Positions 1-6,276 of a DNA stretch of 50,157 nucleotides are shown here, piece by piece. The DNA lies in contig ADNK01000865.1 of the NCBI GenBank assembly GCA_000320545.1, positions 1 through 50,157 of the forward strand, read 5' to 3'. How positions within the stretch are numbered: position 1 is the stretch's first letter; each line of letters begins with the position of its first letter. The DNA is from Bigelowiella natans CCMP2755 (lineage: Eukaryota; Protista; Cercozoa). The position numbers and the translations under genes were made by a program. The notes below the pieces were generated by a model. The model was not told the DNA's origin and did no database searches. It saw only the letters and a program-made list of their open reading frames with translations.

Positions 1-2989
1 ATATAATTATCTAGGTGAACCTGTCCTTCACGCCGCAGGTGTCTCTTCCTCTCACCTTCACCAGGCACAGCATTAATGTTATCCATGATGCGCCTCACTT
101 CTTCTTCAATGGCTTCAGTATCATCTTCCTTAATCTCCTCCTCCATCAAGGTCTTTTCGGTCTGTCCCTCTCCTATTCTTCTTTCGATGCCGTCTCCTTG
201 CTCAAGTGCAGCTCTCTCCTCCACATCTCGTACATCTCCTCCTCCTCCTCCTCCTCCTCCCCTTTCTTCTCTTCCACCCACGGGCCTTTCTTTCCCTGCG
301 ACAACAAAGCGTTGACCATCCGTTCTCCCCCCCCCTGATGCACCAGCATCATCGTCTTTGCCACGTAGACTGGGCCTTTGCTCAGTAAAATCGTCGTTGT
401 CAGTGTTACTGCAAGGTGATTGTTTCTTATGTGATGTTTGGCTCTCTATATCTTCTCCACCTTCGTCTCTTACGACACTACTATATTTTTGGTTCGATTC
501 CTTTTCCTCTTCTTGCTCCTCTTCCTCTTTCTCTTCCCCCGCCTTCTCTTCCTCCTCTGCCTCTTCCTCCTCATGTTGTTGTTGTTGTTGTTGTTGTTGG
601 CGACGATCTTTCTTCCTATCTTGCCTTTCTCGCCTGTTGATGGTGTTGAAGAAGAAGAAGAAGATGATGATGATGATGACTAAACGATACTGATGAGGAT
701 GGTGCTCACAGACATAGCAGCAGTGACAATAGTGGTGATGATGATGGACACAACAACAGCGTATGTCGCATGCTCAACGGCATCATAATGTGCATTTTGC
801 GACATATAAGTGATATGATTATTCGTTTCATCTTTGACGGCAGTGCTCAAACAAGTACTACAACTTTAACAACTACCGATTATTCTTCTTTTTTTTCCCG
901 TCCTCTTTCTGCTGTTGGTGCTGCTGCTGGAGGTCCTGACGCTGCAGCTCGGAGAGAAATACACGGCAAGCCTAGGAAAGGAGTAAGGAGGAGAATATAT
1001 AGATGTCTCACGTAAACTATTCGCAAGATAGAACATGGTGGATGCAGCTGCATAAATATAAGATCCCACACCACCTTCTTTCCCTTATTTTTCCTCTACC
1101 GCTGCTACCACCGCTGCTACTTATAATAATGATAATAGTTGTAATACTTTTCCGTGTGGTACCTTACTATCCATCGCATCATCTTCTATGTGGCCTGGAA
1201 ATGGATGGGGGGAGAAAGAAGAAGCATTGCGTAAAGATTCCATATCAATTTGTCTCTCTCGCGCACAGCTGCCCGAGAGATCGATTTCTGTGTGTTCACG
1301 TTTTTAATTGAAACACATACCACACGCCCGACACGCGTACTGGACGACCTGGCGTTTCCCTTTTCCCTGATATTACGGCATCATTGAAGGATTGGGTGCT
1401 GTATATACGTCTTGCATGTTACATATGGCAAAAATATGCGGTATTCAAAAATTTTGTATATATCGGCCCAGATTTGTTCTCTTGGAGGGGGTATTGGTTC
1501 TCCAGTGAGGAAACGAGGTAGAATGAGAGATAGAGAGACAGAGAGAAATATGTGAGAGTAGGACGGGCAAGGAGGGATCTCATCGAATTCACTACGGATT
1601 TGCTTATATTTGCACAACAACAACAACAACAACAAAAACAACTGCTGCTACAATTGCTACCGATAGCCTCATTGTTGTCTCTGGAATCTTGCAAGCTTTG
1701 AATATAGTAGAGAAATAATTGAGATGATGGTCATCATCATCATCATCATCATCATAATCATCATCATCCTTATAGCTATCATCTTCGTTTTATAAGAGTG
1801 CACTTATCAATCACTGCATCTCTACTACATCTTCTCCATCCAATATCACCCTCCTCCTCCTCCTCATACTCATACTCTCCAATTTACTACCCTTGCACAG
1901 CACGAATCTTGGAACCAACTCATCGATTATGCGACTATCAGTGTTGATTTAGCATCACATCGTCACATGGTGATTGTTGTGCCGAGTCGAGTGAGCAACA
2001 CAAGCGAATAATTAGCCAATAACACAAGGAAACAGCTCTTTTATTCAAAGTTTGGAGCCCATCAGTGTACAGGGAAAGAGAGAAGAGATACAACAGAGAG
2101 GGGTGTAAGAAGGCAGTAGTTTCAAAGTGTCGCAGAGCTATCACAGATTCCACCTTTGCATATCTTCTTGTCTCACGTGACCCTTAAGTACCGCAATATC
2201 TGTAGTAGACGAATTACGTTATTGGCAGGGAGTGATGATGATGACTGGAGCAGGGAAGAGGAGATGATGATAGGCGAATGACAAACGACTATGCATCATT
2301 GCTCTACCTTCTGCCTCATCAGTCTTCACGACCGATGTCTGATGCTATTTGCCCCAAGTTCCGTTATACACACACACACACACACACACACATTATGTAT
2401 ATTATAATATTTATGAAACAGGAGTATGACGTACGTATTAAGCGAAGCTTTGCACACAAATACATTGGTTGAGAAACATCATCGGAAAACAGGCTGGTGG
2501 GTGAGAAAAAAAATATCGATGAGAGTGCTCTTTGAACGGCAACAAGACACGACAGCTAACCAACCGTGAGGCCAAGATATTTGACGATTGCTTCAAATGA
2601 CCTTCCCAGGCACCTTCACAAACGTGAGAAGAGAGCAGAGGATAATAAACTGGGTATACCCACACACACACACATACACATAGTTAAATACCTTGATATC
2701 AATGCCAGATTTGTTATGGTCGTGTGCCCACCTATTCACAAATCTTACGTCAACCACAAAATTGGTGGATGAAAATAAACAAAAACAAGCCAACACGCTC
2801 ACAGTTATAAATATGCACATGCATATACGGACAAAATGACTCATATGCCATCATCTTTATGATAGTGTGAAATCTATCGTCACGTTTGCTCTTCCCATCC
2901 CAAGAAGACTGAAGTCTGGGCATTTTATATCTATAAGAAAGATGCAAAAACTTTAGTTCAAGCCATTTGTCGTGAGGAAACACACACAC

Positions 2990-3052
<63 letters not shown>

Positions 3053-3705
3053 GAGGAGGCTGAAACTCTTCACATGCATACATTCTAGTCACCAAACCTG
3101 TAATTCTCATCATCAGGGTGACCCCCGATGTTGATTCCATTTCCGGTGTTCCTCCCCAGAAAATCGGTCCCCTGTAAAAGAGTATAATGATGATGTGGTA
3201 AGAGTACCGAGCATGGAAAGGAGCAAAGAGCAGAAAAGGGGAACAAAAAGAGTGTTGACTCTCATCATCAGCTTTCCGAAGCTACTCATGCTACCTTTTG
3301 GACATTTTGCAGAATTTTTTGGGCTTGGGTCTGAGCAGGAAGGAGTTAACAGACATATACATAAGCATAATTAAGCGTGCATTTCCTATCACTCATAAAG
3401 AAGCTTTAGTTGTGGTATCTCTTTCAGATACCTGGTGCGATGATAAAGAGAAGAGAAGGCTGTTCCCGCCCCTCAACCGTCTCCACCGTGGAAGAGGTGC
3501 CTTTCTTTCGTTCTATATAGTGAGGGTTGCTATTCTGTATTTTGTCTTCGGTTTTTAAATGCGCTTGTCTGATGCAGGTGTTGATCTACACGCCCCCCTT
3601 AACTCACCCCCCTAATACCGTCACAGCCATCCGAGACCGCACAACTCCGAGATGGGAAACGACCAGAGCGGCCATCAAGACAATTTTTAGCCGAGCCGGA
3701 GACAT
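1..3705 (-). CDS. eIF5-like protein (eIF2beta/eIF5 N-terminal domain) with signal-peptide + basic leader and acidic C-terminal region; multi-exon, 3' end outside window
   Basis: Hand-spliced exons: MSPARLKIVLMAALVVSHLGVVRSRMAVT (3705-3619) | NERKAPLPRWRRLRGGNSLLFSLSSHQ (3512-3432) | TQAQKILQNVQK (3330-3295) | GTDFLGRNTGNGINIGGHPDDENY (from 3171) | RYKMPRLQSSWDGKSK | GHTTITNLALIS | CLGRSFEAIVKYLGLT | ... | DIAVLKGHVRQEDMQ | RIIDELVPRFVLCK | CKIPETTMRLS | KGKRQVVQYACRACG | ... | E/G-rich exon at ~633-55. This matches the eIF5 pattern YRYKMP..., KYFG.ELG, FVLCxxCxxPET, CxACG (zinc finger). One small internal exon near 2300-2500 is not resolved. Confidence 0.85.
2990..3048. repeat. (GA)n microsatellite, intronic
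   Basis: Direct run of GA repeats inside an intron of the eIF5-like gene. Confidence 0.95.
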
Positions 3706-4910
3706 TAGGCTGGGGCCGGATCATATCCACCCACTTCGCTGAGTAGGACGACCCCACATCAGCCGCCCGGGCAGGCAGGGATTGGGGACCTTCATAATGG
3801 TCCCACGAGTTCTGGTAGCTGTTGTTGTTCTCTTTTTTAAGCCGGAAACTTCATACATGAGGCCTTCACCAAATAGCATGCATAAATAGTCATTATTTTA
3901 CCCTTAAAACATCCTAGTTCTAATAACAATAATCAAAGTAATGATGAAGATAAAGATACTACCAACGTATTCAACTGTAGCCACATGTTTTCGTTTGTGT
4001 TAGGTGATTTTCCCATGTAGGAACCCAATGCGCGACGACAGTTGTTGTCGCAAGGGGAACCAAAGAGGCGGTTTTCCCCGTACGACAAGTTTTCGGTATT
4101 GCCACAGTCCGAGTCACCCTTCGATTAACATTTTCATCAGGATTAATGGGAATTTTCATTTGCGACAAACTTGGGTCGATGTCATCGTCCAGATCGCAAA
4201 AATTGGAGCACGCTCTGCGCAAAATGTCGAAAAATATTAGGTCATACGTGAGTAACAAAGGCTCAGTATTACTTGTTCACAACTGCAACAGAGGGAATTT
4301 ATACATTGGATCGTGGTATGGGATATTGTCGTAGGAAATAAACGGCATGTTTTACCAATAAAAATTGCTACGATTCTTTGATGTTATGAGGTTCCACAAC
4401 CGAAGAAGGCCAAACAAGCTAGCTCCTTGGGGCGGCTGCTACACGTACGGCCTGCATGTGTTTTTTCATGTCTAGATTCGTTGACGCTTTTCCAGTTTCG
4501 AAAAAGAAAGTTAAACAATCTTTCAACTCACCACTCTCTTATCTGAGCTGGGCTAAACATTTTAATTCTTTCGGTGAGAGTAATAGATGTTAAAAGAGAC
4601 GAGATCTTGACGTTGTCCACATCCAACTTGACAAATTTGAAGTAAATTATATGGATTCATTCTCAAAAATCAACCACGTTCCTGATTTTAGTCTCCCAAT
4701 CATTTAGAAGTCTCGGCAATGCTCCGGAGATTGACATCTCGATTTTCCCGTCTCGAACGACTTACGAAGAAGAATATGCAACATTTGCCTTCACCTCCGA
4801 AGCTGAGAGGCTGCCGTAGGATCGTGATGCTATCCATGGTATCTATTTCTCTTTGTGATTGATGAGATTCTTCTTCATGCACCTCTCCCTGTTTTCAGGG
4901 TTCGTGTGGC

Positions 4911-6276
4911 ATGTTTCTCGCTGGGTCACTGGGATATTCCCTCATTGTAGCGTCTTTCTTCACATTTTTACGTACGTGATGGGACAAAATACCTATTTCC
5001 CCCCGTCCTATCGCATTATCACCTTTAGGTTGCTGCTGAGGCATTTGGGTCGTCTTACAGGAGCGGTGGCGAGGAGAAGCTGTACTTCGTACCTCATTAC
5101 ACGCTAGAGCGACAGCATATGGCGGAAAAAGCAAAATCTGCACACTTCGATCTTCTGGTTGGGTTCGACAATAGAAATAACACGTCATACATTGCGAATT
5201 CATCCATCGGGACTGGGGACTTTAATGGAAAGCTGATACAGGCTGCAGTAATGTGTCCCCCGGGGATTAACTACAACGATTGGCCCAAAGCAAATATGGT
5301 AGACTTGTACAATGATATCGGATGTATTGTGCACGATCTTAAGAATGACTGCACGGAACGCGCTTGCCCTACAATGAGATTCAGCAGAAACCAATGGCAC
5401 GTACACGCTGACGTCCATGGGAGGGATACCTACGATAGCGCGCCCTCGACAATCGATGCTAAGATGAGCGAGGCAGCATTTTACCTGGGAAACGATTATT
5501 TTAACCTGGCACTTCCTCCTTGGAAGGAAAAAGTTCACATTAACAACAACAGCAACAACTCAGACTCTACCAAGTTGTACCATACAGATGTCGCCCACCT
5601 TGTTGCACTCAATATGGCGCTCGTACTCACGCATCTCCGGCATCACAATGCATCTGGCCATATTCGAGGAATCAGTGCCACGTCCTCCTCAATCCGTTCT
5701 TCTAGATTCAAACATGGTGGCTTATGCTCTTCAGCAGAATCCTCCTCCACATCAGTATCGACAACATCATCATCATCTTCTTCAATAAGCCGTAACACAT
5801 TAACCAAATCACAAGAGTTCCAGGTCTGCCTCTCAAGATTCTTACTCTTCACTGCATACAACGATGTAAGGGAAAACAGCGGATGTTGGAAAATAGGAAG
5901 GAAAGAGAGAAGGGAGAAGAACATATTGTAGTTCACCGAATAATATTTGCAATTTTCTTAATATCGCAAAACGTTTGTATTGGTTTACCACCACTCGAGT
6001 CATCTTCTCCCCACCTTCACTTTCCAATCTATCATACAACCATCATTCATGCTCTCACCATGACCAGCAAGTATGACACATTCATCATACCAAACGGATT
6101 TTCTGTCTCAGATTCTTCTCTGGGACCTTCATTCTGGGGTGCTGGACAGGTGGATGCCTGATCTTACCAGGCAAATGAGAGCGTTCCAGGAGAATGCTCG
6201 CAAGCTGCGACGTGGTCAGAAGCCTGGAGACAAGGATGGTGGTTACGATGGAGATTTCAAAGGGACCAGCATCTAA
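4911..6276 (+). CDS. Divergent MOB1/phocein-family (MOB kinase activator-like) protein
   Basis: ORF 5119-5931 contains IQAAVMCPPGINYNDWPKANMVDLYNDIGCIVHDLKNDCTERACPTM...SAPSTID, comparable to MOB1 LRQAVMLPEGEDLNEW...VDFFNQINMLY...CTEASCPVM...SAPKYID. A GTAAG donor at ~5866 joins a last exon at 6112-6276 (ILLWDLHSGVLDRWMPDL...GTSI*). The start is uncertain: 5119, or 4911 via a short hydrophobic exon. Confidence 0.75.

What the first reader, a model, noticed from the sequence alone, without database searches (positions are those of the whole stretch)
1320..3705. eIF5-like factor with a signal peptide and RLRGG leader: candidate nucleus-encoded translation factor for the periplastid (nucleomorph) cytosol
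Seen in sequence: the eIF5-type domain, which normally begins at the protein N-terminus, is preceded by three phase-compatible exons. They encode a hydrophobic signal-like peptide (MSPARLKIVLMAALVVSHLGVVRS) and an Arg-rich segment (PRWRRLRGG). The domain is strongly diverged but keeps the GAP Arg in YRYKMP and the four Zn-finger Cys. Established: eIF5 serves 80S initiation, so it has no obvious role in the ER lumen or plastid stroma, while nucleomorph-bearing algae import host-encoded eukaryotic-type translation factors (EFL, eIF1) into the periplastid compartment using bipartite leaders. Inference: this is the eIF5 or eIF2beta-like factor for the endosymbiont's remnant 80S ribosomes.
Basis: partly seen in the sequence, partly recalled or inferred. 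Interest (0 to 1): 0.8.

Follow-up and report, generated by a model that had tools for sequence, protein, structure and literature searches.

The report
Leader-bearing eIF5-like gene of Bigelowiella
The alga Bigelowiella natans has a third, fast-evolving copy of the start-of-translation factor eIF5 whose predicted front end carries a secretory-type address label, so it may be sent to the remnant cytoplasm of the swallowed green alga, but no RNA evidence for it could be found.

Summary
On the minus strand there is a gene of at least 15 small exons, all with AG..GT borders. Exons 4-13 encode an eIF5-type N-terminal domain (Pfam PF01873, 60 bits; every solved-structure hit is eIF5).

Three in-phase exons lie upstream. 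They add about 80 residues: a signal-peptide-like start, then a basic stretch containing RLRGG.

The genome is Bigelowiella natans. The gene is JGI's ab initio model Bigna1 71669, which also starts at exon 1 but skips exon 2 (the RLRGG exon) and exon 8.

In favour of periplastid targeting:
- A normal, leaderless, transcribed eIF5 exists on another contig.
- The published nucleomorph gene list has no eIF5.
- An NTF2 paralogue in this genome carries the same kind of leader ending in LRGG.

Against:
- I found no transcript-derived protein or orthologue in three word searches and one full HMMER search, although both other eIF5-like genes are in B. natans transcriptome assemblies.
- No W2 domain is detectable.
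- The start-codon loop GRGNG is replaced.
- The phylogeny is unresolved.

The gene looks like a sister of a conserved, leaderless, W2-less eIF5-like family of chlorarachniophytes.

Verdict: a plausible but unproven periplastid eIF5-like factor, a new member of a known kind. The scan has already noted signal-plus-LRGG leaders on other genes of this genome, though not on this gene.

The parts
3619..3705 (-). Exon 1: ATG at 3705, then 29 codons. It has a basic n-region, a hydrophobic core (IVLMAALVVS) and V-R-S at -3..-1, so it looks like a signal peptide.
   Evidence: only 1.2% of random ATG-initiated open 29-mers are as signal-like. It is also the first exon of JGI model Bigna1 71669.
3432..3512 (-). 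Exon 2: 27 codons, a basic transit-like stretch containing RLRGG (codons at 3465-3479). It is absent from the JGI model, and skipping it keeps the frame.
   Evidence: Its codon-usage score is +10.4 bits, in the top 1.6% of open intron chunks. LRGG is rare by chance and recurs in the NTF2 leader.
3295..3330 (-). Exon 3: 12 codons of leader. It contains an out-of-frame ATG that could start a leaderless product only through a poor GAG acceptor at 3153-3152.
   Evidence: Acceptor position -3 is never G in the 12 acceptors as I model them.
3098..3171 (-). Exon 4: the end of the leader, then the start of the eIF5 domain (INIGGHPDDENYR). It has no in-frame ATG.
   Evidence: tblastn with 88 eIF5 queries hits 3135-3094.
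1163..2930 (-). Exons 5-13 (2930-2884, 2731-2692, 2613-2565, 2344-2308, 2199-2154, 1934-1891, 1695-1661, 1366-1321, 1194-1163): the rest of the eIF5 N-terminal domain, including the Arg-finger motif and the C4 zinc ribbon.
   Evidence: Exon 8 (2344-2308) is missing from the JGI model but restores the canonical spacing.
877..971 (-). Exon 14: the helix after the zinc ribbon (ACRVFLSEL, matching HKLCTFILKN of human eIF5), then the start of a Q/K-rich linker.
   Evidence: alignment.
21..633 (-). Exon 15: a 204-codon, highly charged, low-complexity region (Q/E/K/G-rich). A donor at 20 leads off the contig. The JGI model continues on contig C2873:26545-24463.

Best explanation
This is a nuclear gene of Bigelowiella natans (JGI Bigna1 71669) for a divergent eIF5-like protein: the GTPase-activating N-terminal domain of eIF5, without a recognisable W2 domain.

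The precursor most likely starts at 3705 with a signal peptide followed by a basic transit-like stretch. That is the bipartite leader chlorarachniophytes use to send nucleus-encoded proteins through the ER into the complex plastid.

An eIF5 domain only makes sense next to 80S ribosomes and eIF2. The most likely destination is therefore the periplastidal compartment, where it would act on the nucleomorph-encoded eIF2-gamma during start-codon selection.

Shown: the exon structure is consistent, the domain is eIF5-type, the Arg finger and the zinc ribbon are kept, a separate canonical eIF5 exists, and the nucleomorph gene list lacks eIF5.

Inferred: use of exon 1 as the start, inclusion of exon 2, expression, import, and GAP activity.
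For: - Gene model: 15 exons with AG..GT borders and one open frame.
- Start: no in-frame ATG in exons 3-4, and the only leaderless alternative needs a GAG acceptor, unlike the 12 acceptors as I model them.
- Independent model: FGENESH chose the same first exon.
- Leader: exon 1 is signal-like at the 1.2% level. Exons 1-3 together score +14 bits on codon usage, against -18 +/- 11 for open intron chunks.
- LRGG: rare by chance, and it also closes the leader of an NTF2 paralogue in this genome, 4 residues before the native Met.
- Domain: PF01873 at 60 bits, hhalign probability 99.7%, and solved-structure hits that are all eIF5.
- Other copy: a canonical leaderless eIF5 with transcripts lies on C3234.
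- Need: the nucleomorph gene list lacks eIF5, eIF2-alpha and eIF2-beta but has eif2G.
- Precedent: imported periplastid EFL and eIF1 are established, as cited in PMC5635652 and PMC6411479.
- Rate: the very long branch (2.4 changes per site) fits the fast evolution reported for nucleomorph-associated proteins.
Against: - Expression: no transcript-derived protein was found in length ranges 66-210, 144-458 and 384-1223 aa, nor among the 50% representatives. My model would have ranked third. Both other eIF5-like genes are present in B. natans transcriptome assemblies.
- DNA scans: the exon 4/5 junction and an exon 15 31-mer are absent from metagenome contigs. This is weak evidence, because no positive control was possible.
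- Annotation: the JGI model name (fgenesh1_pg) marks an ab initio prediction.
- Conservation: no orthologue in other chlorarachniophytes turned up among the best 150 HMMER hits.
- Architecture: no W2 domain. The GRGNG(I)K loop is replaced by KSKRGH and ELGAQ is lost, so classical eIF5 function is doubtful.
- Leader chemistry: after the signal peptide the leader is strongly basic with almost no acidic residues. From memory, acidic residues were reported as important for periplastid retention (Hirakawa 2010, which I could not read here).
- Motif position: RLRGG lies 35 residues before the domain, not at the end of the leader.
Confidence: 0.45

Rival explanations
1. The gene is an unexpressed, barely expressed or decaying paralogue: a lineage-specific duplicate of the chlorarachniophyte eIF5-like family whose predicted leader has no function.
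For: There is no transcript-derived protein in any search, while both paralogues have them. Only an ab initio model exists. No orthologue was found. The branch is very long and conserved motifs are lost. An out-of-frame ELGAN relic lies just upstream of exon 8, next to a (GT)n run.
Against: Fifteen exons keep one frame and canonical splice sites despite about 2.4 changes per site. The Arg finger, all four Cys and 22 of 31 invariant residues are kept. The alignment to eIF5 runs across nine exon junctions with only small gaps. The leader exons look coding-like.
Confidence: 0.25
2. The protein is a host-cytosolic eIF5-like regulator, like its leaderless sister family. In this reading the leader exons are a gene-model artefact, and the real product starts elsewhere, for example at the ATG in exon 3 spliced to the AG at 3153-3152. 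That would give an N-terminus with the same 10-residue spacing before NIGG as the sister protein.
For: The sister family (Bigna1 85066 and Lotharella relatives) is leaderless, with in-frame stops upstream of its ATG in five transcript assemblies. The alternative start gives the same spacing before NIGG. The junctions are unverified.
Against: The alternative acceptor is GAG, lies 20 bases behind a strong pyrimidine-rich CAG acceptor, and is unlike all 12 acceptors as I model them. The signal-like exon, the LRGG motif and the coding-like score of exons 1-3 would all have to be chance.
Confidence: 0.12
3. The leader is real but sends the protein somewhere other than the periplastidal compartment (ER or secretory route, or plastid stroma), where the eIF5-like fold has taken on a role outside translation.
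For: The transit-like part is strongly basic and poor in acidic residues, as in stromal precursors (the retention rule is from memory). There is no W2 domain and the start-codon loop is altered. The JGI model has an unrelated C-terminal region with faint Tudor-like hints.
Against: No function is known for an eIF5 N-terminal domain away from eIF2 and 40S subunits. The Arg finger and zinc ribbon are kept. The nucleomorph lacks eIF5 while keeping eIF2-gamma.
Confidence: 0.08

Closest known systems
Canonical eIF5 (for example human EIF5, N-terminal domain structures 2G2K and 2E9H; B. natans eIF5 on contig C3234 = P0004)
   Same: The N-terminal eIF-5_eIF-2B domain, the NIGG..YRYKMP Arg-finger motif, the C4 zinc ribbon, the helix after it, and a charged linker.
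   Different: An N-terminal extension of about 80 residues. The GRGNG(I)K loop and ELGAQ are replaced. The zinc-ribbon loop is 4 residues longer. No W2 domain. Best identity is only 41%, on a very long branch.
[quoted passage not shown] 2009, 2010, as cited in PMC5635652 and PMC6411479)
   Same: A eukaryotic cytosolic-type translation factor, encoded in the host nucleus beside a leaderless host copy, with a signal peptide plus transit-like leader. The function is missing from the nucleomorph genome.
   Different: Those were found as transcripts and localised with GFP. This gene has no transcript or localisation evidence, and its leader chemistry was not compared with theirs.
Short W2-less eIF5-like family of chlorarachniophytes (Bigna1 85066 = P0001; Lotharella UniRef A0A7S3Z098 = P0121; L. 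oceanica P0270; P0271)
   Same: A divergent eIF5 N-terminal domain, no W2, and a shared G/K-rich lengthening of the zinc-ribbon loop (21-22 residues against 17-19). The two group together in the best tree, with support 83/84.
   Different: That family is leaderless, transcribed, conserved in several genera and ends in GGLFEIQ. The window gene has a leader, a long charged region, and no detected transcript or orthologue.
NTF2 paralogue of B. natans with a signal-like start and a leader ending in LRGG (contig C3434, locus L032)
   Same: A cytosolic- or nuclear-type protein with a hydrophobic N-terminal start, an Arg-rich stretch and LRGG in the leader.
   Different: There LRGG lies 4 residues before the native Met. 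Here it lies 35 residues before the domain, on an exon that the public model omits.

Membership tests
eIF5 (eukaryotic translation initiation factor 5) | N-terminal eIF-5_eIF-2B domain (Pfam PF01873) above the curated cut-off | tested here: met
   60.1 bits against a cut-off of 27, residues 62-171 of P0125, profile positions 6-116 of 117. hhalign probability 99.7%.
eIF5 (eukaryotic translation initiation factor 5) | eIF5-specific N-terminal motif with the GAP arginine (Y-R-Y-K-M-P) and a C4 zinc ribbon | tested here: met
   Y13, R14, Y15, K16, P18 and C98, C101, C119, C122 (numbered on B. natans eIF5) are all kept. All solved-structure hits are eIF5 and none is eIF2-beta.
eIF5 (eukaryotic translation initiation factor 5) | Conserved loop E-G-R-G-N-G-I-K, invariant in 16 canonical eIF5s. 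From memory it holds the yeast SUI5 G31 and K33 sites. | tested here: not met
   K23S, E25D, R27K, G28S, N29K and G30R. The loop reads DGKSKRGH.
eIF5 (eukaryotic translation initiation factor 5) | C-terminal W2 / HEAT domain (PF02020) | tested here: not met
   No PF02020 hit in P0125. hhalign matches only the N-terminal domain. The six-frame genome search finds W2 only on C3234 and C2956. Caveat: the 3' gene structure is an ab initio model, and small exons can escape six-frame search.
eIF5 (eukaryotic translation initiation factor 5) | The domain begins at the protein's N-terminus | tested here: not met
   The motif starts at offset 12-20 in 115 of the 119 relatives in which it was found. Here it starts at about residue 93 with exon 2 included, or 66 in the JGI model.
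Nucleus-encoded periplastid-targeted proteins of chlorarachniophytes | N-terminal signal peptide followed by a transit-peptide-like stretch | tested here: inconclusive
   Hydrophobic core with mean Kyte-Doolittle score 2.9, a basic n-region and small residues at -3/-1, a combination seen in 1.2% of random starts. It is followed by a basic, Ser/Leu-rich stretch. No SignalP or chlorarachniophyte-trained predictor was on hand. The start codon and exon 2 are not confirmed by RNA.
Nucleus-encoded periplastid-targeted proteins of chlorarachniophytes | A separate leaderless host-cytosolic copy exists | tested here: met
   Canonical eIF5 lies on C3234. It is identical to the transcript-derived P0004 and starts MLNIGG.
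Nucleus-encoded periplastid-targeted proteins of chlorarachniophytes | The function is not encoded by the nucleomorph | tested here: met
   The published list has only eif1A, eif2G, eif4A and eif6 (PMC4035089, supplement 1). I could not search the nucleomorph genome itself: G000 lacks it, since only one eIF6 locus was found and its GC is 47%.
Nucleus-encoded periplastid-targeted proteins of chlorarachniophytes | The leader is present on the mRNA, and the protein is localised to the periplastidal compartment | not testable with these tools
   No read-level RNA data and no experiment were available. Protein-level and pattern searches found no transcript.
eIF2-beta | Lys-box N-terminus and best similarity to eIF2-beta rather than eIF5 | tested here: not met
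   All best hits are eIF5. The two eIF2-beta genes of the genome lie elsewhere, on C2996 and C2728.

The most novel reading that the evidence does not exclude
The periplastidal compartment of B. natans runs a stripped-down initiation pathway. In it a host-encoded, W2-less eIF5-like GAP with a rebuilt start-codon loop serves the nucleomorph-encoded eIF2-gamma. Its precursor belongs to a class of leaders marked by a ubiquitin-tail-like (R)LRGG motif, which would be the cutting site for a ubiquitin-protease-like processing enzyme. Neither the motif nor the factor appears in the literature I could search.
Probability: 0.25. Interest if true: 0.7.

Novelty: new member of a known kind. Interest (0 to 1): 0.45.

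Why it matters
Nucleomorph genomes lack several initiation factors that are essential in yeast, eIF5 among them. How the remnant cytoplasm starts translation is an open question. A host-encoded, imported eIF5-like protein would fill one of these gaps. Because it lacks W2 and the usual start-codon loop, it would also show which parts of eIF5 a minimal eukaryotic translation system can do without.

The finding also corrects a public gene model: two small exons are missing. It adds one more case to a recurring LRGG-containing leader type in this alga. The value is limited for now, because expression and location are unproven.

Tried and rejected
1. Six-frame Pfam search of the genome did not see the window's own domain, because the exons are only 32-87 bases long. 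The exons were found by reading the sequence and confirmed exon by exon with tblastn.

2. I tried to retrieve a transcript-derived protein with profiles in which exons were given as separate referenced rows (A4, A13) and with P0125 residues 1-200. Only the ab initio model P0125 turned up. Alignments A1-A3, A5-A12 were discarded because MAFFT scattered the short exon rows.

3. Two exact-pattern scans of metagenome contigs (the exon 4/5 junction and an exon 15 31-mer) found nothing.

4. Phylogeny: the window gene is a 2.4-changes-per-site branch. AU tests reject neither a green-plant clade (p 0.15) nor a clade with host eIF5 (p 0.20).

5. I looked for the rest of the gene on contig C2871 and found nothing. 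The JGI model continues on C2873 instead.

6. I looked for a signal-like exon within 4.9 kb upstream of the second eIF2-beta gene (C2728) and found none.

7. The eIF2-beta-like reading was rejected.

8. Curtis et al. 2012 and Gilson et al. 2006 could not be read. Suzuki et al. 2016 has no supplements held.

9. NBP35 and eIF5A loci were fetched to check further LRGG leaders, but the N-terminal exons were not in the fetched pieces.
Full report
**What is in the sequence.**
Reading 1000-4200 on the minus strand and assembling exons in a script from window.fa gives 13 exons with AG..GT borders and one continuous frame. They are 3705-3619, 3512-3432, 3330-3295, 3171-3098, 2930-2884, 2731-2692, 2613-2565, 2344-2308, 2199-2154, 1934-1891, 1695-1661, 1366-1321 and 1194-1163. 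Two more follow at 971-877 and 633-21. A donor at 20 then leads off the contig, since window base 1 is base 1 of contig C2872.

Exons 1-3 are all phase 0. Exon 1 starts with ATG and encodes a basic n-region, a hydrophobic core and V-R-S. Exon 2 encodes a basic stretch with RLRGG. Exon 4 carries the last leader residues and then INIGGHPDDENYR, which runs into YKMPRL in exon 5. Exons 3 and 4 have no in-frame ATG, so translation must begin upstream.

**A note on method.**
The joined spliced model was built only inside local scripts, from window.fa. It was used for translation, for local BLAST and HMMER against proteins already fetched, and for trees. It was never typed or sent to a database tool. 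Database searches used exons by reference, as separate alignment rows, and later the public model P0125 that a search returned. The joined-model database search was therefore left out.

**Is it eIF5?**
The local model aligns from residue 81 to 209 with residues 2-128 of canonical eIF5s, with up to 41% identity and E 1e-29. tblastn supports exons 4, 5, 10, 11 and 12 one by one.

The public model P0125 scores 60.1 bits on PF01873 and 99.7% probability in hhalign against 16 canonical eIF5s. It hits only eIF5 chains among solved structures, the best at 2.8e-14.

Of 31 residues invariant in those 16 eIF5 N-terminal domains, 22 are kept. These include the Arg of YRYKMP and all four Cys. The losses cluster in the loop EGRGNG, which here reads DGKSKR, and in ELGAQ.

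No W2 domain is found in the model or near the locus. It is therefore an eIF5-like protein with the eIF5 N-terminal domain. It does not meet all the defining features of eIF5.

**Organism and annotation.**
P0125 is EukProt Bigelowiella_natans P005195, which is jgi/Bigna1/71669 (fgenesh1_pg.16), an ab initio model of 699 aa. The genome is 91.4 Mb in 3736 contigs.

The JGI model independently starts at the same exon 1. It skips exon 2 and, by using a donor 4 bases further on, skips exon 8 as well. Exon 8 restores the canonical spacing between the FFG and VNG positions, where the JGI model has a 10-12 residue gap.

The JGI model runs on through a 204-codon charged region and onto contig C2873. 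Its tail there has no known domain, only faint Tudor-like hints. That part may be a fusion with a neighbouring gene.

**Other eIF5 and eIF2-beta genes.**
The genome holds:
- A canonical leaderless eIF5 on C3234. It starts MLNIGG, has a W2 domain, and its N-terminal domain as modelled from the exons is identical to the transcript-derived P0004.
- A short, W2-less eIF5-like gene on C3647 (P0001 = Bigna1 85066).
- Two eIF2-beta genes, on C2996 and C2728.

The short gene is present in five B. natans transcriptome assemblies held by JGI, with in-frame stops upstream of its ATG. It has relatives in Lotharella and other chlorarachniophytes that end in GGLFEIQ.

The window gene and this short family share a lengthened, G/K-rich zinc-ribbon loop: 21-22 residues between the Cys pairs, against 17-19 in canonical eIF5s. 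They are on the same side of a branch in the best tree, with support 83/84. However, both are long branches. AU tests cannot reject a green-plant clade (p 0.15) or a clade with the host's canonical eIF5 (p 0.20). The origin is unresolved.

**Is the leader real?**
For:
- No other start is available except a product beginning at the out-of-frame ATG of exon 3. That needs a GAG acceptor 20 bases behind a strong CAG acceptor, and none of the 12 acceptors as I model them has G at -3.
- FGENESH picked exon 1 independently.
- Only 1.2% of ATG-initiated open 29-mers in the window are as signal-like as exon 1.
- Exons 1-3 score +14 bits on a small codon-usage model, against -18 +/- 11 for open chunks of the gene's own introns.
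- A Mob1-like gene starts divergently at 5119, so only 1.4 kb is left for further upstream exons.
- LRGG occurs at 3-5 per 100,000 six-frame residues, so about 0.3-0.4% of 80-residue leaders would contain it by chance.

Notes of this scan list several B. natans leaders with LRGG. I checked one of them myself. An NTF2 paralogue on C3434 has a hydrophobic start, an Arg-rich stretch and HLRGG 4 residues before its native Met, with the Pfam NTF2 domain starting 12 residues later. This changed my view of exon 2 from possible chance to probably a real leader exon. No paper in the searchable library joins LRGG with nucleomorphs.

Against:
- No transcript-derived protein of this gene exists in the 15-billion-protein collection within 66-210, 144-458 or 384-1223 aa, nor among the 50% representatives.
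- A local replay showed that my model would have ranked third.
- Two exact-pattern scans found nothing, though without a positive control.
- The junctions therefore remain predictions.

**Does the compartment need it?**
The published nucleomorph gene list for L. oceanica and B. natans holds only eif1A, eif2G, eif4A and eif6 among initiation factors (PMC4035089, supplement 1). For the cryptophyte Guillardia the lack of eIF5 is stated outright (PMC3388326). Import of EFL and eIF1 is established, as cited in PMC5635652 and PMC6411479. The nucleomorph genome is not part of this assembly, so I could not search it directly.

**Verdict.**
The periplastid reading is the best single explanation (0.45) but is not shown. 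The main rival is an unexpressed or decaying paralogue (0.25). Next come a mis-modelled 5' end on a cytosolic protein (0.12) and another destination (0.08). The kind is known, so this is a new candidate member. Its unusual features are the lack of W2 and the rebuilt loop.

Noticed in passing
L004:1186-1974 (-) = G000:C3647, protein P0001: A short (250-340 aa), leaderless, W2-less eIF5-like family is conserved in chlorarachniophytes (B. natans, Lotharella species and others). It ends in GGLFEIQ, has a long basic insert in the domain, and is transcribed in five assemblies. Its role is unknown.
   Followed up: partly
L001:1180-1914 (+) = G000:C2728:105421-106155: There is a second nuclear eIF2-beta gene (PF01873, 95 bits, no intron in the domain) besides the one on C2996. 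No signal-like exon was found within 4.9 kb upstream. The nucleomorph list has no eIF2-beta, so its destination is worth checking.
   Followed up: partly
L032:1018-1869 (+) = G000:C3434: An NTF2 paralogue has a hydrophobic N-terminal start, an Arg-rich stretch and HLRGG 4 residues before the native Met. This is the same leader type as in exon 2 of the window gene.
   Followed up: partly
window 3432-3512 and 2308-2344 (-): The public model Bigna1 71669 omits two small in-frame exons (81 and 37 bases). It probably also fuses an unrelated C-terminal region from contig C2873, which has faint Tudor-like hints.
   Followed up: partly
window 2347-2361 (-): Just upstream of the exon 8 acceptor, in another frame and next to a (GT)n run, the DNA reads ELGAN. 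This is the conserved ELGAQ motif that the modelled protein lacks, so it may be a relic of a shifted exon border.
   Followed up: no
window 5119-5931 (+): A Mob1/phocein-family open frame (PF03637, 44.6 bits, partial) is oriented divergently from the eIF5-like gene, with 1.4 kb between the two ATGs.
   Followed up: partly
window 2995-3050, 2370-2400, 2655-2680, 1735-1790 (-): The introns of the gene hold microsatellites: (CT)n, (GT)n and (ATG/ATC)n runs.
   Followed up: no
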